Program-made: the position numbers and the translations under genes
Shown: one piece after another, positions 23,478-40,117 of the stretch
Position numbering within the stretch: the first letter of the stretch is position 1
How the letters are laid out: each line of letters opens with the position of its first letter
The notes under the pieces: model-generated
The model's database searches: none
The model's input: only the letters and a program-made list of their open reading frames with translations
Told to the model about the DNA's origin: nothing
Assembly: GCA_021613535.1 (NCBI GenBank)
Contig: CP075495.1
Span: 372,001 to 436,000, forward strand
Length of the DNA stretch: 64,000 bases
From: Adineta vaga
Taxonomy: Eukaryota > Animalia > Rotifera
Direction: 5' to 3'

Positions 23478-26400
23478 ATGAGCGTCGAAAACGTGCTAAA
23501 GTCAAACGATAATTCGATTGGCGTGGAAGATGATCAGAAAAATGATATTACAAATAAAGCAAATCAATTCGAAGAAGGTAAGGACAAATAATTTGCTATC
23601 AAGAGTTCGAGGAAACATTCTTCTTTTCTAATGATGACTTTGAAAAATGATGCCGAGATCAATTTATCCATTTTGATCTTTATTTATAGGATTTCCGAAC
23701 GATGTCATTGGCGAAGATGAAAATACACGACGGACCTTAGTAAATCGATTACATTTAGCAAGTCAACTCGAACATTGTTTATTGAATGCTTATATTTACA
23801 CAGCCTGTTCGATTAAAAGTATTCCAGAAGAATTCGACGAACTCATCGATGGTCATCGAAATAGGCGTATGTCTATTCAATTTGAACGCGCACGTGAATG
23901 GAAACAAAGTGTGCTGATGGTAGCTCATGAAGAAATGATTCATCTCCATTATGTTCAATGTATGCTACGAGCACTCGGTGAAAGACCCTACTTTCAATTA
24001 CCACAAAAGAACGAAAAACATCATTGGTGGATCCCTAATTGGAAACCTAAGATTGGAGAAATTTTGGTAAATGATGGCAAAGGCACAATCGTTCCAATTG
24101 AATCGTGTACGCTTGAAAGTATAAAGCATTTCGTTCTATACGAATCGAGCGATCCTCTTCAAGTCATGGATCCTTTTGGCCAAGAAGCAACAAAATTATT
24201 TGAAAGATTATTCAATTTCGAAATTCGTCTTCGCATCGAAAGCATGTTAGCCGATATTGATGATACAATGCGCAACGATTTGGCTGAGAAACTGTTCAAA
24301 ATCTATACAGAGTTACCACCATTAGTGGAAACAGTACAAAAAATCCAAGCAGTTTCCTACGCCGCCGAGCTGCAGATCGACAAGGATGAATTTCATTTTC
24401 AATCAATTGGCGATTTCTATAATAATGGAATAGAACCATTGTACGACATAGCATTTGAAAAAAAATGGGTTAAATACAACAATATAGATCTTTTGGGTGA
24501 ACAACTTAATCCCAATATTGGTGCTGAAGGTTTTCTACCAGTTGGACCCATCTATCGATCTAAGAATTTTGAAAAAGAAGTTCATTCACCGAATTCAAAA
24601 GATCCTTATGATAATCGAAAGAATATAAGTAGAATTATCAAAGAAATAGTTGAAGAAGGTGAAGGATTCAATGAATTCAAGCAGAAAGCGGAATACATGC
24701 TGGATATAGTCGAAAAACCCGATGGTGCTCGCAATTATTTACTGGCATTATCTGCAGATATAAATAAAAAGAGTACTGAAACATCAGAATTTCTGCCAAC
24801 ATGCCAAAATGTAAGACAATCACATTTGTATCGTTTTGCTATGATAATGACGGCTTTTAAACAAGAAAAAAAACTAGCTAATCAAGTGAATACAACATTT
24901 GAAGTACATCGACAGCCGATAGATGTCAACGAAAATATCGAACTTAAACATATTTGCGAACAATTGCCACTCTATTTTAATGCTTGCTATCTTGTTATGA
25001 TTATGTGGCTTTCAAGAATGTATGAAGTCAAAGGATGGCAATTCGACAAATCTCGACGTCAAGCAATCGAAATGATTGCCACATGGCCTATAATGTCAAT
25101 TGGTGTTCGTCCTTTTCTGGAATTAGCCTCTTTTTTTCCAATTGATAAGATCAAATTGTTTTCAATCTGCTTGGATGATCTTCCTTCGTTGCCTGATAAT
25201 GCTCGTCAACTGTTTAAAATATACAGTGAAAGTGAAAGATCGGAAGAGATTAATGAAAAATTGGACGAATTTGCTTTGAACACATTGAAAGATATTGCTA
25301 AATGGGCAGAAGAAAAGCATAAGATCATAGAGAATTTGGCCATTACTGGTCATGAAAAAAAAATGATTCTCGCACGTCTAACTGGTCTCACCGTACTCAA
25401 AGAATTTGAACCGCAATTCACATTTCGGGAACATGGTGGCTATTCAAATAAACCGCCAGATCTCAGCTATCAATGGCAACATACTGACAGCAGCAAGTAC
25501 GAAGAAAATCCAGCGAGAACAGATGAAAATGATGATCCAATTAAAGTCTTTGAGAATATACTGTTACTACGTCTGCGTTTCTCAGGCTGGGGACACGCAC
25601 AACTGGCGACTGATCCAGATCCTCCGAACGATGAAAGTGGTTGTACAGGTACACATATGATACATGCAGCAGATGGAGAACGAGTCTTAAATCGTGCTCT
25701 TGTATGGCAAAAACATTTGAACGATCCTACTGAATTTGCTCGCGAACCCACCAATAATTTGCCGAAAATCGGTGTCAACTGCGTCAACATTTCTCTGATG
25801 GCTTCTGGTGAACATACAAAAGTGGGGTACATACCTTTATCAGTTATGCAATCGACGGGAGCCGTACAGACCAGCGGTACACAAATGGAACTTAGTATAC
25901 AGGGTCTAAACGAAGTCTTGCGATATACGCCGAATGATATTATTGAACAACCAGAAACACAAATACGCATCGATCTGTTGGACAAAGATGGAAAGAAACC
26001 ATTTCTGCTAGGAGAAAATCATTTGATTTGGAAGGATGGCGAACCGATCGATCCCTTTATTCTCTCCATCTCAAGTGTTCCAAACGAAACATCGAGTCAA
26101 GATATGAAATTGGAATTTCAACGAGAAATCTTTAATGAAAACAAATCTATGACCAATATGATGCCATTAGAACGTCTTCTTACAGCGCGTGGACCGGTAG
26201 GATTTGATAATGTATCAAATATACCAGCATGGGCTAAACTTCATTTCTTCAATGATGAAACAAAAATGTTAACACAAAACGAATATCCAAAGAATTATCT
26301 ACAAAAACGGGCACATCATCTGTTCAAGGTAATGCACGAAAAACTAGACACACACATTGAACAATTGACGGCTGAACAGGTGACTGATATTATTTCATTT

Positions 26401-27126
26401 GCTGAACGCATGAAATTAGTATCATTTCCACGTAATACTACCGTAGGATGGCTTTCAGCTCTTCTTCACTATGGTCATACAATTAGTGGAAAACTAGACA
26501 ATGGTCAAAACAGTCGAATACTTAAAACCATTTGTGATAAAACAGGTCTTTCTTGTTCAATCTTTGATGACGAAAATCGAAATGCAACTAATTCACGTTG
26601 GCTTATCAAATATACTTTAGGTATGATGGATACAGATGCTTTATCTTCTTTTGTTTTTGGTGAATTATATGTACCACTAAATATCGCCAAACCAAATAAA
26701 CAAATCAAATTCAGTAAAGAATGGCTCTATAATATTGATCTGTATCAAGCAATTGCAAGTTTTGGTTGTAGTTTTACGAAGCCTTTCTGGCGCAGTGATT
26801 ATATTATACAAGATAAACAAACTCGTACTCTCGCTATTAAAATTAATAAAAAAGATGAAATTATATTGATTGAAAGATGCGTCCAGGATTTTGGAACGTC
26901 TGGTTACGAATATACACAGGAGGGCTTTAAAGGTATAAAAAATTGTCATCAATACATTAAACTCGAACATGATATTCACAATAAGACCAAGTTTACATGG
27001 ATGATTATATTTGAAGCTGAAAATGCGGAGAGTGTTGTGTATATGACGAACTTTTTTGGCGAACAGAGTGCCATGGTCAATGAAGCACTTCAAAATAATT
27101 TTACACCCGATATTCTTGATTCATAA
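23478..27126 (+). CDS. Ferritin-like (VioB/RebD/StaD-type) domain + VioB-N-like region + C-terminal SRPBCC/polyketide-cyclase-like domain; probable horizontal acquisition
   Basis: Exon 1 23478-23577, intron 23578-23689, then LHLASQLEHCLLNAYIYTACSIK, AHEEMIHL..MLRALG, FQSIGDFY, IVEEGEG and SHLYRF. Central LRLRFSGW...LATDPDP. C-terminal RTL...IER...YEYT...TKFTW..FE. Confidence 0.8.
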
Positions 27127-33170: not shown

Positions 33171-34388
33171 TCTGAGACAATGCAGAAAAGAAAAATTGTT
33201 ATATGGAATAATTATGAGATAATGATACCATTGGTGAATAACGTATTCATTATGTCTAAAGTTGTTATAAATTTTTCAAACAGAAAACATTTTCAGGGAC
33301 GATACTTTCAGCTTATCGAAGTTGAATCATAACTAACGAAGAGTCATTTGAATCTAAAATAGCTGTACGTTTATTCCGGTCCTTGTTGTCTGTAATCGAA
33401 CCTGATAGAAAATGGAAATTGAGAAAGAATATCCAAAGCATTGGTATATTGATCACATCGTACACTTCTCTTTTCTGATTTTCCACAATATTTCATTAGT
33501 GAACAACAGCAACAGAAAATAAAAAAAAAATAAACGATTTTAAATTTGATCTCTTTTGTTTCAAACACTGTTTTTAATCTTACTGAACGTTTTGACCTAA
33601 AAAATTTAAGTGAAGGTAAAAAGTCATACTTTCGTTCAAACCATTAGCCAATATGTTTATGGCAAATATTCGTTTTTAATTTCACAATGGATAAGATGAG
33701 TTAATAATTATCAAATAAAACAGAAGAGAAAATTACTTTGTGATATGAATGTATAATATCAATCACAAAACGTTTTGAACGATAATTAAAAGATATATTT
33801 GATGCATTAAATGAAATATTGATTAAGTTTATAATCATTTGATACATATTGAATCTAACTGAATAAAAGATTTTGCTATTATTTTTTCAAATATTGCATC
33901 TTGGTAGAAAATATGAAGAGACTCATGATTATTATCAAAGAACAATAGAAATACAAAAAGAGATATTTTATTCTCACACTTAAAATAGTATTTACTATAG
34001 TTCAGAAAACATTGGTTGTATGCATGTCTATCTGTCTGTATCAGGGTCAAAGGTCAAGGGTTAAAGAAAAAACTTTCCTTAAAAGAATCTCAAAGATTGA
34101 AAACTGAGAGCAGGGTGAGGTGGGAGACAAAGGTAAAGGGTAAACGATTAAAAGTTAAAGATCATACATACCCAAATTTTTAGAAGTTTTCTTTATTTTA
34201 ACGAAAAACTCGATAATTAAGACTTGTTTCTAGCAAGAAAAGCAACTCAAAATAAAAAAGCTTACAGCGTTGAGGAAAGCAAAGGAAAAACATAAACTTA
34301 ATGCAAAATATCATAAAACTTTCGATTCACCAAAACAATAGAAATTATAAAAAGAAACTGAAAAACAAAGTATTATGAAAACTCTCTT

Positions 34389-36162
34389 TTAAATATCATC
34401 TTCAGTTTCTCTTATCATTTTCAATAATTTTTGAATATACTTGGTTGGTACATGCTTTCCTTGACCTTGATTGCAATAGATACTGAAAGCAGCAATTCGG
34501 ACAACTCGGTCCGATTCCCAGACACTAAGATATTCTCGTTCTCTTGCCGTCATTGGTTCTTCTAGCCAATCTCTTAAAAGAAGATTACCTAAATTTTGAC
34601 CAGAAATAATATTATACAGTTTTGTCAATGGAACGGATGTTGAATTCAATTTCTGCTGAGCTCGACGATAAACTTGGGCGAACACATCCCGAGATTCAGC
34701 AGCATTTCCACTTATAGACCGAGCAGCGTAGTTCTTTTTCACTGCACGATCATAGTCGATTCCATAAGAGATACCATCATCAGGATTGTCTTTTTTCATT
34801 GCACGATCATAATCGATTCCATAAGAGATTCCATCATCACCATTTCCATTCAAAGACCGAGCAGCGTGGTTCTTTTTCATTGCACGATCATAATCAATTC
34901 CATAAGAGATTCCATCATCAGCATTTCCACCCACAGATTGAGCAGCATTGTTCTTTTTCACTGCACGATCATAGTCGATTCCATAAGAGATACCATCATC
35001 AGGATTGTCTTTTTTCATTGCACGATCATAATCAATGCCGTAAGAGATTCCGTCATCACCATTTCCATTCAAAGACCGAGCAGCGTGGTTCTTTTTCATT
35101 GCACGATCATAATCAATGCCGTAAGAGATTCCGTCATCAGCATTTCCACTTACCGACCGAGTAGCGTGGTTCTTTTTCATTGCACGATCATAATCAATGC
35201 CGTAAGAGATTCCATCATCAGCATTTCCACCCACAGATTGAGCAGCATTGTTCTTTTTCATAGCACGATCATAATCGACTGTATAAGTGATTTGATCATC
35301 ATGATTGTCTTTTTTCAATGCACGATTATAATCAATTCCATAAGAGATTCCATCATCAGCATTTCGACTGGAGCTTAAGTGTGGCTGTGCTACGCTGCCG
35401 ATATCGGTACAAATTGAAGATGGTTTCACACTGGAAAGAGTAGAAAAGTGAAGGTTTGATCTGAAGTCATTGAAATCAGTAGAGTGAAGTTTACCTGTAT
35501 TCTTTTTCCTTTTGATAAAATGCTAAAACACGCCGGGCTAAACGTCGACAATGCTCATAATGTGAATAATCGGCAACATTATCTAATTGTTTGCCTTCAG
35601 ATAGCTGTTGATTAAACATTTCAATCATATGCAAACAATGAGGTCCGTGTATTAACATAATTCCATTATTGTAAGGATCAGTTAGAGGCCATGGTAATCC
35701 ATCGTCATCTGTTGTAAACAATAGTCCTTTGCCATCTGAAATTTTTTAAAACAATAAGTTAGACACCTCAACAGGATCTTACATTTTGTGTCTCTTACCT
35801 TCTGTATTACTAGGCGTCGCGAATGATATATTTTGTGCCAGTTCTTTTCGTTCTCTTGAAACATAATGTTTCCATTTTTTTTCTGTCCATACTGAACAGT
35901 TAGCCAGTTTCTGATCACGTGCATATGCCAAGTCGACACTTGTACAAACACAATCATTCTGTGACAAATGTTGATCACAATCTGTAGTACAATAACATTT
36001 TCCTGTGGATCGACGTCGACTACAAAATCCTTTCAAAGCCTCCGATGAACCGTCCACTTGTTCGCAAACCAGTTTACGACCGCCGCTATAACTTTTGTTC
36101 TGAGCTAAAGAGATCGCCAGAAATAAGGAGAGTGTTACAACAATTAATAGTAACACTTTCAT
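34389..36162 (-). CDS. Secreted fusion protein: Cys-rich N-terminus + twin HxxHC (DUF3328/UstYa-like) domain + 9 KK-flanked Tyr-containing core repeats + C-terminal domain (3 exons, ~548 aa)
   Basis: Exons 36162-35799, 35735-35495 and 35430-34389 (1647 nt, in frame, GT-AG introns of 63 and 64 nt). Signal MKVLLLIVVTLSLFLAISLA; HGPHCL and HYEHC; repeats DDGISYGIDYDRA(M/V)KK. Confidence 0.85.
34735..35365 (-). repeat. Coding tandem repeat (57- and 81-nt units) encoding the core-peptide cassettes
   Basis: Recurrent + strand motif GCACGATCATAATC...TAAGAGATTCCATCATC, 9 units. Confidence 0.95.
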
Positions 36163-36883
36163 TTTCGATATCGATGCGTCGGTTGGAGAGGTAGTGTAGA
36201 AGAAACGAGTCAAAGCACAGATTATTTATAGTGTGAGTTCTAGACTAGGGCTGTTACATTATCTTTATTTTTCTGCGAAAGAACTGTAAAGATAATCTCT
36301 AAGTTCAAGAATAAAATCAATATAAAGATTAAGGATTTTTTTGTTATCATCAGAAATTAATTCCTTTTGGACTGTTTGCTCTTTGATTTCAAATAAAAAA
36401 AACACACACGTATATATACTTATCTTAATAATCTCAGAAAGAGAAAAAGAGATGTATTTATTTAAATATTTATAAGAGATCACAGAGTTGAAGTCACATA
36501 CATCACGTGAGACAAAAGAAATATTTAAGAGAAGAGAGACAATTGGTGATGACTGTAACAATTATTCTTACAGAGAAATAGAATATGTTTTTAAATACTA
36601 GCAGATTATTGTCGCGATGTGGCGCGACAGCGGTCAATTTTCTACCGCGATGGACAACTCTGGCTGAAAGAAGATCGAGCATAAATATCAACAGATTAAA
36701 CGAAGAATCTATTCACCATTTTATAAAATGCTGTACTGATTGTTACATGAAAATCAGGAATCAACAACAATAAATAGACGTCAGTAATGCGTGGCAACAA
36801 AGAACAATGGAAATTGTGTAGGTGTGAATGGGAGAAGAAAAAACACGCACCCACACCCAAAGAATATATGTAATTAGAATTGT

Positions 36884-37932
36884 TTATTCAAGTTCTATAT
36901 TTGAATTGTTTGTACTTATAATTCCAGGTAGAACTTTATTTCTTGATACCGAACAGAAATATTTGAATTTTTGCCAATATTTTCTTATTAAAAGATATTT
37001 CACTTGACGACGATACCGTGATGATGTGATCATAAAGACATAACAACTAATCTATAATAAATTAAAATATTCAATTTGAATCAAATAAAAAAAGAATAAA
37101 TATCTACCGAAAAGTTTAGAGAAACTAAAGATAGTAAAATTGATAGAATTAATTGTCTTATTGCGTAGTTTAACGGTTGATTTTGTGTAACAGGAACATT
37201 AACAGCATAAATACGAAAAATTGTATATGGTAATAAAAGACAAACTAACATTACAACACGTATAAGAACCATTGCTGTCATTTGTTGATCTAATCGACGT
37301 CGAGTTATTTGAATTTGTCGACGAATAATATGACGAACATTTCGATAAGCTAAAATATTAAACAATGATGCAATAATAATAGGTAATAAACCAATTAAAA
37401 CTGGATAAAAGAAGTATGTTGAATATTTCACCCATACTGGATTTATTATAATACAGCCAATTGATGGTTGAATATAAAAAAATAGAACAAATATAATACT
37501 ATGAATTGACCAAATACATATTGATATACTGATAAGATATCGAGCCAATCTAATTGTACATATTTCTCTTAAATTGAAATAATAATTTGTTGAAAGAAAT
37601 TGATCACAAGCACCAAAACATATTGTGTATGATGTGGTCAGTGTAATTGTTTGACTTAACATATATCGAAATCGACACCAAATAAGATTTCTTCCAGTTG
37701 CATCATCTCCATATACTATTGTTAAAATCATTATACTAATATTAAGAAATTGATTAGAAAAACTTGAAATTGATTCAACAGTTAAATAAAAAGAAGATCG
37801 ATTATTATGAAAAAGTTTTAATTGAGTAAAGACAAGAATATTTAAAATATTACCAATCACACCGATAAAGATTGTGATATACTTTACGTAAAGAGAATAA
37901 TTTATTGAAAATTCTAAGATTTGTTCAGACAT
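36884..37932 (-). CDS. Class A (rhodopsin-like) GPCR, 2 exons
   Basis: GNILNILVF, CFGACDQFLST, RRRLDQQMTAMVL; the last exon encodes YVFMITSSRYRRQVK. Confidence 0.9.
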
Positions 37933-38518
37933 TATAATGATGAAATTGTCAATTAACTATGATGATACTAAGAATATTATTCGCTTTTTTTCCTATTTGC
38001 CTCATGAGTTAATTTTGAATATTAAAATGACGTAGACAAAAAAATCAAATAAACTGTTCGATCTTCTTAATAAAATGTCGATACCTTTGAGGAAAAGTAC
38101 TTTATATAGATAATTATATTTTACTAGTGACGAGCTGACTTGATGATACGGCATGACAACTACGCACAATAACAAACGCTAATTCTTTGCATTCGCAAAG
38201 CTTTTTATGAATGAATGAGAAGAACGTCTAGTCGGTCGGCCACTTACGATCACTCGTTTTGCACGTTTTACTTCAATATATTGTTCTCTCAAAACATATG
38301 AGAACTCAAATAGACCTCTCATAAAACGCATTTCCAGTGTTTTGCGTATCATCTTCCTTTCAGTCGAAAGAATAACAATTAACCTTCAGGTTTTTATTTA
38401 TATTTACAATCAATGATGAAAATTCTAAAGAACGAACGAAAAAAAAGAAAGACGTGATTGTAACTTTGAATTTTTTGATGTCACATTTTTGTTAATATTT
38501 ACATGTCCTTCGAAATCA

Positions 38519-40117
38519 ATGGTAGTCGAAACAAATAAAAATGATACATTGACGAAATATTTTATAATAGTAATTGTAATTTTAATTAGTTTAATATATA
38601 TTATTTATAATATTTATCCAATTTTACAATTAAATCAAATAAAAATAAAATATTCTGATAATTATCAACGCGATAATATATCTACATTATTAAATTCTTA
38701 TATAATAACTCGAAATCGTACATTTAATAAAATAGAAAAACGTATATTTATTAAAAATGAAACAGCATATTCATTACCAATGAATTATGATTATATTGAA
38801 TTTGTTAAAGATAATAATTCCATAATTTATCCATATTCAACATGGAAATGTTCCAATACATCAAATACAATTGAAACTAGTCGTGAATATTGTATATTAA
38901 CAAATATTTATTATAATTCAAAAATAGATCGATATTATTTTTATGAAAATCCTTTATTAAATCAAACAAATTCATATCGACATTTTTTTCAAATAACAGC
39001 TGAAGAACTTCAAATACATCGTATAACTAATTTAAAAGAATTAAATGATAAAATATCTTCTATATTAATTCGACCAATATTAGTTGGTGATCCACCTGAT
39101 TTAAATTATATGCATGGTTTTCTTGAAGTTTGTGGTCCAAGATTTTGGGTTTTATCTGAATGTCAATATCATGAATCATATATAAATCCTTCTAAAATTC
39201 AAATTTATTATACATCAACAATGTTTAATATTCATAATGAAAATTGGAATCGATATGAACAACAATCAGATAAAACATATCGTCCAAAACGACAATGGGA
39301 ACAAATTATTCATTCAATGTTTTCAATTTATCCATTATTAATTTATCGTTCATTTAATGAAACAATAATTATGTTTAAATATATGATTTTTCCTGGTCAA
39401 CAATCAAGTCGATCAGTAACATGGGGTTATACACATCTTGCTCGACAATTTCAATCCTATCCATTTTCAACAGAATATTATCGTCGAGCTTATTTAAATT
39501 ATTCTGAATGGATTTTATTTCATTTAAATTTAAAATCAAAATTTGAAGAAAATTATCAAAATGAATGGATTGTTGTTTTAAATCGTTATGATACAAATAT
39601 TCGTCGAATAAATAATGCTAAATATTTAATAAAAAGTTTATTAAAACATTTTCCTAATCATTTAAATCCATATTTACGTGTTTGGCCAAAAGAATATGAT
39701 TTTAATGAAAATTTTTATCAATCTGTTCGAATGGCACGATCAATTCGTTTATTAATTGCTGTTCATGGTGCTGGTTTAGCAAATACATTATTTATGAGAC
39801 CAGGAACTATTGTTTATGAAATAAATCCATATGGTTGTCGTCATTTATCTTTTTATTATCGTCGTTGGATTGAAATATTTAATCTTCAATATGCTTTATG
39901 GATTCCATCATTTGGTGAACGTAAACAACAAGATGATGTATGTGGAAGAAATAATGCAATAACATTAAATATTCAAGAAATTATTGATGAAATTAAAAAT
40001 TTATTAAAAAATGAACAAGAATATCGAAATGGTTATTTACAAAGAGCATTTAATATTATTAATGATTTATCATTTGTCGATTCTCCACCACTCGGATATG
40101 AAGATATTTTATCATAA
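38519..40117 (+). CDS. Glycosyltransferase family 61 (type II membrane)
   Basis: N-terminal TM helix, NYMHGF, VVLNR...RRINN and the diagnostic LIAVHGAGLANTLFMRPGTIVYEI. Confidence 0.85.
   Translation: MVVETNKNDTLTKYFIIVIVILISLIYIIYNIYPILQLNQIKIKYSDNYQRDNISTLLNSYIITRNRTFNKIEKRIFIKNETAYSLPMNYDYIEFVKDNNSIIYPYSTWKCSNTSNTIETSREYCILTNIYYNSKIDRYYFYENPLLNQTNSYRHFFQITAEELQIHRITNLKELNDKISSILIRPILVGDPPDLNYMHGFLEVCGPRFWVLSECQYHESYINPSKIQIYYTSTMFNIHNENWNRYEQQSDKTYRPKRQWEQIIHSMFSIYPLLIYRSFNETIIMFKYMIFPGQQSSRSVTWGYTHLARQFQSYPFSTEYYRRAYLNYSEWILFHLNLKSKFEENYQNEWIVVLNRYDTNIRRINNAKYLIKSLLKHFPNHLNPYLRVWPKEYDFNENFYQSVRMARSIRLLIAVHGAGLANTLFMRPGTIVYEINPYGCRHLSFYYRRWIEIFNLQYALWIPSFGERKQQDDVCGRNNAITLNIQEIIDEIKNLLKNEQEYRNGYLQRAFNIINDLSFVDSPPLGYEDILS

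What the first reader, a model, noticed from the sequence alone, without database searches (positions are those of the whole stretch)
34389..36162. Candidate animal RiPP system: DUF3328/UstYa-like HxxHC oxidase fused in one gene to a KK-cleaved multi-core Tyr peptide precursor
Seen: three ORFs listed separately in the track splice through canonical GT-AG introns (35798-35736, 35494-35431) into one ~548-aa secreted protein. Exon 2 carries HGPHCL (35649-35632) and HYEHC (35562-35548), 29 residues apart. Exon 3 carries nine cassettes DDx-I-[ST]-Y-x-[IV]-D-Y-[DN]-R-A-[MLV]-K-K (8x ISYGIDY, 1x ITYTVDY). Established: paired HxxHC motifs are the signature of fungal DUF3328/UstYa copper-dependent oxidases. 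These macrocyclise Tyr-containing cores of dikaritins (ustiloxin YAIG, asperipin-2a FYYTGY), whose precursors are signal-peptide repeat proteins with acidic residues before the core and dibasic Kex2 sites. In fungi the enzyme and precursor are separate genes; fusion of a copper cyclase to its own core repeats is known for plant BURP-domain peptides. Inference: this gene is an autocatalytic precursor-cyclase producing Tyr-crosslinked cyclic peptides, possibly for defence, in a micro-animal. I know of no described case of this architecture.
Basis: partly seen in the sequence, partly recalled or inferred. Interest (0 to 1): 0.96.

Follow-up and report, generated by a model that had tools for sequence, protein, structure and literature searches.

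The report
Rotifer peptide precursor inside a four-histidine domain
A rotifer gene, with relatives in nematodes, encodes a secreted protein whose conserved four-histidine domain, reminiscent of fungal copper peptide cyclases, is split by nine copies of a small tyrosine peptide, so it may be an animal enzyme that makes modified peptides from itself.

Summary
Transcript contigs from two runs of one study skip both introns at the stated bases. Both HxxHC motifs and nine Tyr cassettes ending in KK are present.

New findings:
- This is a protein family of at least 46 clusters. Named members come from bdelloid rotifers and Meloidogyne nematodes; the rest come from unnamed environmental contigs.
- All four His are invariant.
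- The C-terminal tail (aa ~440-548) belongs to the same conserved helical domain. The cassettes are therefore a disordered insert inside the domain, not an appended tail.
- In relatives the insert is hypervariable, enriched in Tyr/Trp, often flanked by dibasic sites, and multiplied in several branches of the tree.

Membership of DUF3328/UstYa is not established. No Pfam hit reaches the cut-off. hhalign gives 82% probability over 62 columns, and most of that score comes from the motif itself. No fold match was found.

Best reading (about 0.45): a self-contained precursor plus copper-type oxidase that modifies its own aromatic cores before dibasic cleavage. It resembles fused BURP cyclases in layout and UstYa in motif. 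No description of it was found in the searched paper library. The chemistry is untested.

The parts
34389..36162 (-). Whole coding region of A. vaga I4U23_005774 (548 aa, 3 exons). Transcript contigs extend at least from 34300 to 36179.
35799..36162 (-). Exon 1: signal peptide (aa 1-21, 36162-36100) followed by a Cys-rich module (aa ~28-110, 36081-35833) found only in the bdelloid members.
   Evidence: AF2 pLDDT 47-70 for this module
35736..35798 (-). Intron 1 (63 nt, GT..AG, phase 1)
   Evidence: Skipped in transcript contigs of X1 and X4
35495..35735 (-). Exon 2: N-terminal half of the conserved domain, with invariant P138 and both HxxHC motifs
   Evidence: family profile hit of 90 bits
35509..35667 (-). 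Predicted helix-loop-helix (aa 145-197) carrying HGPHC (35649-35635) and HYEHC (35562-35548)
   Evidence: AF2 helices H145-167 and H175-197 with pLDDT >90; four His invariant
35431..35494 (-). Intron 2 (64 nt, GT..AG, phase 2)
   Evidence: Skipped in transcript contigs of X1 and X4
35409..35411 (-). Invariant Cys209, which closes the N-terminal half. A disulfide with the near-invariant Cys521 (34475-34477) is inferred.
   Evidence: invariant and near-invariant columns; the disulfide itself is inference
34734..35357 (-). Array of nine 16-aa cassettes of the form DDGISYGIDYDRAMKK (one variant, DDQITYTVDYDRAMKK), separated by 3- or 11-aa spacers. The array is predicted to be disordered.
   Evidence: pLDDT <50 for aa 219-430
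34392..34718 (-). C-terminal half of the conserved domain (aa ~440-548; GQNLG, conserved E499, C521)
   Evidence: Aligned in nearly all homologues; family profile hit of 77 bits; AF2 helices with pLDDT >90

Best explanation
The gene encodes a secreted protein in which one conserved helical domain is split into two halves, aa ~113-215 and ~440-548. Between the halves lies a disordered insert carrying nine Tyr-x-(Ile/Val)-x-Tyr peptide cassettes, each ending in Lys-Lys.

Shown here:
- The gene is transcribed and spliced as modelled.
- The domain defines a family in bdelloid rotifers, root-knot nematodes and unnamed environmental eukaryote contigs.
- Four His, arranged as HxxHC-(15-24 residues)-HxxHC on two consecutive predicted helices, are invariant.
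- The insert is the variable part. It is enriched in Tyr/Trp and in dibasic runs, and it occurs as 1 to 9 copies in different lineages.

Inferred:
- The four His bind copper, as in fungal DUF3328/UstYa enzymes.
- In the secretory pathway the domain oxidises the aromatic cores of its own insert. A Tyr side-chain cross-link to the aliphatic residue two positions on, as in ustiloxin and phomopsin, is the likeliest chemistry; hydroxylation is an alternative.
- A furin or prohormone-convertase type protease then cuts at the dibasic sites and releases the modified peptides.

Functionally this would be the animal counterpart of the fused, autocatalytic BURP cyclases of plants.
For: Gene model and expression.

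Family:
- phmmer of aa 1-215 against 1.84 billion representatives gives 46 hits.
- Named members are Rotaria, Didymodactylos and Meloidogyne hapla, enterolobii and floridensis.
- The M. hapla gene sits on a 3.2 Mb contig among genes carrying CUB, COesterase and DAO domains.

Conservation:
- H151, H154, H180, H183, P138 and C209 are invariant. C155, C184, E499 and C521 are at least 90% conserved across 39 sequences at 20-43% identity.
- Every member that covers the region has the double motif.
- One cluster has lost both motif Cys together (HGPHS and HQRHS), which fits a disulfide pair.

Structure: in AF2 the two halves are confidently folded (pLDDT >90) and the array is disordered (<50). A compact homologue folds as one helical domain with pLDDT 85.5 and pTM 0.79.

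Insert:
- Tyr+Trp content is twofold that of the rest of the protein in 35 of 43 members (p 1.6e-5). Dibasic runs are twofold enriched (p 0.001).
- Cores are multiplied in several branches of the tree: A. vaga 9x, Rotaria 3x, P0010 5x, P0042 3x.
- The dibasic site is kept among bdelloid orthologues while the residues change: KK, RR, KR.
- The nematode clade has RxRR-G-x-W...W...RKKR.
- Within the A. vaga cassettes, synonymous codon differences outnumber non-synonymous ones 114 to 60.

Link to UstYa:
- The four weak Pfam hits all map to profile positions 126-175, which is the double motif.
- hhalign against 20 genuine UstYa ORFs gives probability 82%, E 1e-5. The real score of 42.5 exceeds all 60 shuffles that kept the motif columns fixed (26.8 +/- 5.4).

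Background from papers:
- DUF3328 enzymes are binuclear-copper enzymes with the motif on helices (PMC12435403).
- UstYa-type enzymes cross-link Tyr to Ile in Kex2-processed multi-core precursors (PMC9233826).
- Fused autocatalytic BURP cyclases exist in plants (PMC12186524).
Against: - PF11807 does not reach its cut-off for any member, and the hhalign match vanishes without the six His/Cys columns. The motif may therefore be convergent.
- The rest of the domain differs from UstYa. There is a signal-peptide-like N-terminus instead of a membrane anchor. The conserved downstream Cys pattern of UstYa is absent. There is an extra C-terminal helical half.
- No fold relative was found.
- Many compact members have a single aromatic motif without dibasic sites, which could simply be a structural loop.
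- KK without a preceding Gly, and acidic Tyr peptides, also fit linear or sulfated secretory peptides.
- No peptide product, copper binding or activity has been observed.
Confidence: 0.45

Rival explanations
1. An ordinary prohormone or secretory-peptide precursor. The nine cassettes are released as linear (possibly Tyr-sulfated) peptides. The His/Cys helical domain is a carrier, sorting or metal-dependent packaging domain, comparable to neurophysin in vasopressin precursors, and performs no oxidative chemistry.
For: Signal peptide, tandem copies and dibasic sites. Furin-like RxRR and RKKR sites bracket a short peptide in nematodes. Acidic residues next to Tyr are typical of sulfation sites (my own knowledge). 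No enzyme family assignment passes its threshold.
Against: The invariance of four His in a UstYa-like double motif over very long branches (median terminal branch 0.86 changes per site) is more than a carrier role would usually need. There is no Gly for amidation. No known neuropeptide family is hit. Many members have no dibasic site at all.
Confidence: 0.25
2. The functional product is the folded two-half domain itself: a secreted metal-binding protein or an oxidase acting on other substrates. The insert is a disposable linker that is cut out, like the insulin C-peptide, leaving two chains held together by the C209-C521 disulfide.
For: The two halves are far better conserved than the insert. 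AF2 packs them confidently while the insert is disordered. Conserved Cys residues in both halves could tie the two chains together. Dibasic sites lie at both ends of the insert in the nematode clade.
Against: A disposable linker would not keep an aromatic motif (Tyr/Trp enriched in 35 of 43 members). It would not be multiplied as near-identical cassettes in several branches of the tree.
Confidence: 0.15
3. A self-modifying structural or adhesive protein. The copper domain converts the repeated Tyr residues to DOPA or dityrosine, so that the uncut protein cross-links, for example in gland secretion, egg shell or cuticle.
For: Tyr-rich tandem repeats with Lys are typical of DOPA adhesives, and binuclear copper enzymes oxidise Tyr (my own knowledge). 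The array is disordered.
Against: The nematode and compact members have a single short core, which is not a structural repeat. The dibasic sites are conserved as sites rather than as particular residues. Only 18 Tyr in 250 insert residues is low for an adhesive.
Confidence: 0.07
4. A genuine fungal DUF3328 gene acquired by horizontal transfer and later fused to a repeat region.
For: Bdelloids and root-knot nematodes both carry many foreign genes (PMC4632278, PMC3511272). The double motif and the hhalign probability of 82% point to UstYa.
Against: No member passes PF11807, whereas genuine UstYa ORFs score 96-178 bits. phmmer found no fungal protein among its 46 hits. The family is deeply diverged, with separate rotifer and nematode clades. 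The bdelloid genes have introns. UstYa's flanking regions are not shared.
Confidence: 0.05

Closest known systems
Fungal DUF3328/UstYa copper oxidases (UstYa/UstYb, AprY, CctR; Pfam PF11807) with their separate multi-core precursors (UstA type, dikaritins)
   Same: Both have an HxxHC-(x)n-HxxHC motif on helices with invariant His. Both are routed to the secretory pathway. Both use repeated Tyr cores followed by dibasic sites. The Tyr-x-Ile/Val spacing is that of the ustiloxin and phomopsin cross-link (PMC12435403, PMC9233826).
   Different: The Pfam cut-off is not reached, and the profile similarity is confined to 62 columns around the motif. The motif spacing is 15-24 residues here against 24-35 in UstYa. 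The N-terminus looks like a cleavable signal peptide rather than a membrane anchor. UstYa's downstream Cys pattern is missing. There is an additional C-terminal helical half. The cores lie inside the same polypeptide. The hosts are animals, whereas DUF3328 is reported as exclusively fungal (PMC12435403).
Plant fused (autocatalytic) BURP-domain peptide cyclases (burpitides)
   Same: One polypeptide carries both a four-His copper-type site and several core peptides with aromatic residues. Multi-core arrays are common (PMC12186524).
   Different: There is no BURP domain here. The predicted fold is all-helical. The cores sit inside the domain rather than N-terminal to it.
Fungal borosins (omphalotin type), in which a methyltransferase is fused to its own core
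   Same: The principle is the same: an enzyme modifies a core peptide encoded in its own chain (PMC7878506).
   Different: The chemistry (N-methylation) and the fold differ, the core is single and C-terminal, and there is no sequence relationship.
Animal multi-copy neuropeptide and prohormone precursors
   Same: Signal peptide and tandem peptide copies separated by dibasic sites.
   Different: Such precursors do not embed their peptides in a conserved four-His helical domain. There is no amidation Gly, and no known neuropeptide family is hit.

Membership tests
DUF3328 / UstYa (PF11807) | Match to the Pfam model at or above the gathering score (25 bits) | tested here: not met
   There is no hit for P0001 or its parts at E<=10. 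Four of 39 relatives score 10.5-16.3 bits. PF11807 finds nothing in the A. vaga genome. Genuine UstYa ORFs score 96-178 bits.
DUF3328 / UstYa (PF11807) | Conserved HxxHC(x)nHxxHC motif | tested here: met
   The four His are invariant and both Cys are at least 90% conserved in 39 sequences. Every member covering the region has the motif, with n = 15-24. UstYa ORFs have n = 24-35.
DUF3328 / UstYa (PF11807) | The two motifs lie on two helices of a helical domain | tested here: met
   AF2 places H151 and H154 in helix 145-167 and H180 and H183 in helix 175-197, with pLDDT >90. The same holds in the compact homologue. This is secondary structure only.
DUF3328 / UstYa (PF11807) | Profile-profile homology beyond the motif | tested here: inconclusive
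   hhalign gives probability 82%, E 1e-5 over 62 columns. Shuffles with the motif columns fixed score 26.8 +/- 5.4, with 0 of 60 reaching the real 42.5. With the motif removed, the score falls to 11.4.
DUF3328 / UstYa (PF11807) | N-terminal membrane anchor and a disulfide-linked homodimer (four-helix coiled coil) | not tested
   By inspection the N-terminus looks like a cleavable signal peptide. Dimerisation was not examined. UstYa's conserved downstream Cys columns have no counterpart in A1.
DUF3328 / UstYa (PF11807) | Binuclear copper site formed by the four His; copper- and O2-dependent activity | not testable with these tools
   Model coordinates are not returned and no Cu ligand is offered. 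This needs ICP-MS, EPR and an activity assay.
Dikaritin-type multi-core RiPP precursor | Signal peptide, tandem near-identical cores with a conserved aromatic residue, and a dibasic site after each core | tested here: met
   There are nine cassettes, each ending in KK, with Tyr at fixed positions. Orthologues use RR or KR. The signal peptide is judged by inspection.
Dikaritin-type multi-core RiPP precursor | Modified (cross-linked) peptide product | not testable with these tools
   Needs LC-MS/MS.
Fused BURP-domain peptide cyclases | BURP domain (PF03181) | tested here: not met
   No PF03181 hit in P0001. BURP matches do exist elsewhere in the genome.
Neuropeptide precursors | Homology to a known neuropeptide family, or amidation signals (Gly before the dibasic site) | tested here: not met
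   No Pfam family is hit. The cassettes end in ...RAMKK or ...RAVKK with no Gly.

The most novel reading that the evidence does not exclude
Rotifers, root-knot nematodes and other small soil eukaryotes share an undescribed family of self-contained RiPP synthases. In each, a copper-binding four-His helical domain carries its own aromatic core peptides in an internal loop, cross-links them (Tyr or Trp side-chain macrocycles), and is then cut at dibasic sites. This would be the first side-chain-macrocyclised RiPP class encoded by animal genomes. It would be either a very distant relative of fungal DUF3328 or an independent invention of it.
Probability: 0.35. Interest if true: 0.95.

Novelty: new variant of a known kind. 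Interest (0 to 1): 0.82.

Why it matters
DUF3328 copper enzymes were characterised biochemically only in 2025 and are reported as exclusively fungal (PMC12435403). Enzyme-plus-core fusions of copper cyclases are known only from plants (PMC12186524).

A conserved animal family with the same histidine signature wrapped around its own variable peptide cores would have three consequences:
- It would extend this chemistry to animals.
- It would provide a set of natural core variants (Tyr-, Trp- and Cys-containing, 1 to 9 copies) in one small soluble secreted protein. That is a more tractable model than the membrane-bound fungal enzymes.
- It would point to unknown bioactive peptides in rotifers and in plant-parasitic nematodes.

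If the chemistry does not hold, the family is still an unannotated, deeply conserved secreted four-His domain with no fold relative.

Tried and rejected
- **Kp4 killer-toxin assignment.** The Pfam Kp4 hit on the N-terminal Cys-rich module scores 16.6 bits against a cut-off of 27.8 and occurs in only 1 of 39 members. Rejected.
- **ESM Atlas by features.** Best score 0.76 for aa 22-215 and no usable hit for P0019. No lead.
- **Fold searches of the compact model.** Atlas TM <=0.29, PDB Foldseek E >=0.36, VIA wide Z <=3.3. No relative found. This does not show the fold is new, because no DUF3328 structure seems to be in these libraries.
- **Profile against PDB sequences.** Nothing below E 0.3.
- **Complex prediction.** The two domain halves were tested against a 41-aa two-core peptide. 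The result was no verdict (score 0.00, alignments not used, peptide disordered). This is no evidence either way.
- **The search for homologous proteins.** With exon 3 and with the family alignment it returned almost only self and a few members, because it is limited by its word index.
- **Paralogues.** There is none in the haploid A. vaga assembly.
- **Source organisms of the environmental contigs.** The 5' end of one contig shows no spliced leader that I recognise. One 7 kb contig looks like an intron-rich eukaryote. The source taxa remain unknown.
- **Joining the exons.** The exons were searched separately by reference. The full length was used only as the stored database protein P0001.
Full report
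**Observation.**
On the minus strand, three reading-frame pieces join through GT..AG introns at 35798-35736 and 35494-35431 into one 1647-nt coding sequence, 36162-34389. The exons were searched separately by reference. The search with exon 3 returned a stored database protein, P0001, "hypothetical protein I4U23_005774 [Adineta vaga]", 548 aa. The whole genome has 100.8 Mb in 6 contigs, and the window lies 0.37-0.44 Mb from the start of contig 2.

Contigs of two runs from one study (X1, X4) skip exactly 35431-35494 and 35736-35798, and one contig covers exon 1, exon 2 and exon 3. The gene is therefore transcribed and spliced as modelled. The evidence comes from assembled contigs of one study, so it says nothing about expression level or tissue.

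The nine cassettes, eight ISYGIDY and one ITYTVDY, each end in KK and lie at 35357-34734.

**The gene belongs to a family.**
phmmer with aa 1-215 against 1.84 billion representatives found 46 proteins. Three of them (P0002-P0004) match the whole N-terminal part. Most of the others are 200-270 aa long and match only aa ~113-212.

Named members are:
- Rotaria sp. Silwood1 and Silwood2 and Didymodactylos carnosus, all bdelloid rotifers.
- Meloidogyne hapla, M. enterolobii and M. floridensis.

The M. hapla gene is an intron-less ORF on a 3.2 Mb contig, among genes carrying CUB, carboxylesterase and DAO domains. The remaining members come from contigs of about 1 kb (JGI, Logan) whose organisms I could not identify. 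A maximum-likelihood tree puts the bdelloid sequences in one supported clade (97/91) and the nematode sequences in another. Branches are long, with a median terminal branch of 0.86 changes per site. In the haploid A. vaga assembly the locus is unique.

**Anatomy of the family.**
In the 39-sequence alignment, H151, H154, H180, H183, P138 and C209 are invariant. F128, C155, C184, E499 and C521 are at least 90% conserved, at 20-43% pairwise identity to the rotifer protein. Every member covering the region has two HxxH(C/S) motifs 15-24 residues apart. Only one cluster (P0010 and its members) lacks the motif Cys, and it lacks both at once. That fits a C155-C184 pair, although it is a single evolutionary event.

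The last ~110 residues of the rotifer protein align with the C-terminal part of nearly all members (GQNLG, LT..E, G.YC). The family profile hits the A. vaga locus in two pieces, exon 2 at 90 bits and the C-terminal tail at 77 bits.

AF2 with the family alignment gives pLDDT >90 for aa 100-215 and 445-540, and <50 for aa 219-430. The compact homologue P0019 folds as one helical domain (pLDDT 85.5, pTM 0.79), with its lowest confidence in the segment between the two halves. The cassettes are therefore a disordered insert inside one conserved domain, not a tail fused to an enzyme. The Cys-rich module at aa 28-110 occurs only in the bdelloid proteins.

**The insert.**
Between the invariant Cys and the C-terminal half, the sequence is unalignable across the family but has a common character:
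- Tyr+Trp content is twofold that of the rest of the protein. It is higher in 35 of 43 members (Wilcoxon p 1.6e-5, inflated by relatedness).
- Runs of two or more Lys/Arg are twofold enriched (Poisson p 0.001).

Cores are repeated in several branches of the tree:
- A. vaga: nine copies of ISYGIDY.
- Rotaria: GLDYNIRY-RR, GLDYGLRY-RR and ISYGLSY.
- Didymodactylos: one VTYTVAY...KR.
- P0010: five copies of GL(S/N/K)Y(S/N)IDY, without dibasic sites.
- P0042: three copies of WWYI(T/N)D.
- P0026: ISYGINYGINY.

Among the bdelloid orthologues the dibasic site is retained while its residues change (KK, RR, KR). In the nematode clade the insert reads FPGGR(I/V)RR-G-x-W-x-x-(x)-W ... R-x-K-R, a short two-Trp peptide bracketed by furin-type sites. 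Within the A. vaga array, synonymous codon differences between cassettes outnumber non-synonymous ones 114 to 60, and the Tyr, Ile, Asp, Arg and Lys positions never change.

The transcript contigs differ from the assembly at 15 coding positions, 7 synonymous and 8 not. The exon with the motifs carries a single synonymous change. The sample is small.

**Is it DUF3328/UstYa?**
PF11807 does not hit the rotifer protein or its parts even at E<=10, and it finds nothing in the genome. Four of 39 relatives give 10.5-16.3 bits against a cut-off of 25, all on profile positions 126-175, which is the double motif. No other Pfam family recurs.

To run a proper profile comparison I fetched genuine UstYa genes. 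A back-translated FHQLHCLN pattern was scanned over metagenome contigs and gave 40 ORFs with a second HxxHC 24-35 residues downstream. Twenty non-redundant ORFs were aligned (A4). The ten that I tested score 96-178 bits on PF11807. One caveat is that the set was chosen by this motif variant.

hhalign of the family against A4 gives probability 82%, E 1e-5 over 62 columns. The aligned stretch runs from about 20 residues before the first motif to just after the second. Controls:

| Comparison | hhalign score |
|---|---|
| Real alignment (gappy columns trimmed) | 42.5 |
| All columns shuffled | 13.0 +/- 3.1 |
| Six His/Cys columns fixed, rest shuffled | 26.8 +/- 5.4 (max 39.6; 0 of 60 reach the real score) |
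| Six His/Cys columns removed | 11.4 |

Most of the signal is therefore the motif. The surrounding columns add a modest amount (about 3 sd) but are not detectable on their own.

UstYa's other conserved features have no counterpart here: the ~125 profile positions upstream of the first motif and the conserved downstream Cys columns. Conversely, the C-terminal half of this family has none in UstYa. Fold searches found nothing, and no DUF3328 structure appears to be in those libraries. I could not measure His-His distances because model coordinates are not returned.

My conclusion is that this is a UstYa-like metal motif on a helix-loop-helix. Distant homology is possible, convergence is not excluded, and membership is not established.

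**How it most likely works.**
Shown: a protein with a signal-peptide-like N-terminus, a conserved four-His/Cys helical domain, a disordered aromatic insert, and dibasic sites.

From the literature:
- In DUF3328 enzymes the same motif, on helices, binds two coppers and supports O2-dependent hydroxylation, halogenation or macrocyclisation (PMC12435403).
- UstYa-type enzymes link a Tyr side chain to an Ile in Kex2-processed multi-core precursors (PMC9233826).
- Plants have BURP cyclases fused to their own cores (PMC12186524).

Inferred: the rotifer domain binds copper in the secretory pathway. It oxidises the Tyr-x-Ile/Val-x-Tyr cores of its own insert, either in cis or between molecules. A convertase then cuts after KK and releases nine peptides of 17-25 residues, which may be trimmed further. 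I put this at about 0.45.

The rivals are:
- A plain prohormone with a metal-binding carrier domain (0.25).
- A two-chain metalloprotein whose insert is a disposable linker (0.15).
- A self-cross-linking structural protein (0.07).
- A transferred genuine fungal DUF3328 (0.05).

A complex prediction of the domain halves with a two-core peptide gave no verdict and is not used as evidence.

**Novelty.**
Searches of the held papers for DUF3328, UstYa or HxxHC together with animals, rotifers or nematodes, for fused UstYa architectures, and for the peptide or the locus tag, found no description. The 2025 CctR paper states that DUF3328 proteins have so far been found only in fungi. All database members are unnamed or "hypothetical". 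One UniRef entry is labelled DUF19, which a Pfam scan does not support.

I rate this as a new variant of a known kind: a copper-type peptide-modifying enzyme carrying its own cores. It occurs in a new host group, in a new domain context, and with the cores inside the domain.

Noticed in passing
L129 (G000:C5:4396977-4397450, minus) and L130 (G000:C3:13634983-13635123): The Pfam BURP model (PF03181, the plant copper peptide-cyclase domain) hits the A. vaga genome above its cut-off, at 68.5 and 36.2 bits. This genome may therefore hold a second copper-cyclase-type gene. An earlier first-stage note (s1-505244) had flagged this.
   Followed up: partly
window 36081-35833 (aa 28-110 of P0001): An N-terminal module with 8 Cys is present only in the bdelloid members (P0001-P0004, P0009, P0054). 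AF2 confidence is only 47-70. A weak Kp4 hit occurs in a single member and is not credible. The function is unknown.
   Followed up: partly
P0010 cluster (L005, JGI contig Ga0210276_10919052): This member has five GL(S/N/K)Y(S/N)IDY cores without dibasic sites. Both motif Cys are replaced by Ser (HGPHS, HQRHS), while the four His are kept.
   Followed up: partly
P0016 and P0021 (environmental members): Both carry extra Cys-rich C-terminal tails (for example CRSCCQWCGGRC...CGCGCCY) after the conserved domain. This is possibly a further peptide or module.
   Followed up: no
L131 1-3130 (Rotaria sp. Silwood1 contig CAJOBT010006654.1): The Rotaria orthologue lies next to called genes with weak retroelement-type Pfam hits (RVP_2, Ty3_capsid, PEG10 capsid, zf-CCHC). 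I only observed this.
   Followed up: no
window 23782-27126 (+): A 1114-aa uninterrupted ORF lies about 7 kb from the gene. A first-stage note (s1-489990) reads it as a bacterial-type secondary-metabolism enzyme. I did not examine it.
   Followed up: no
window 37081-37932 (-) and 38489-40117 (+): The immediate upstream neighbours are a 283-aa ORF with the look of a seven-helix receptor and a 542-aa ORF of unknown type. There is no protease, tyrosinase or other obvious partner gene next to the locus.
   Followed up: no
window 34393-36130 (coding positions): Transcript contigs of runs X1 and X4 differ from the assembly at 15 coding positions (7 synonymous, 8 not), so they come from another haplotype or strain. 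Laying contigs on the repeat array is ambiguous, because 13-16 contigs fit two places.
   Followed up: partly
P0060 / UniRef A0A1I8BMN7 (Meloidogyne hapla): The source names this protein 'DUF19 domain-containing protein'. A Pfam scan of the identical-length P0030 shows no DUF19 hit at E<=1.
   Followed up: partly
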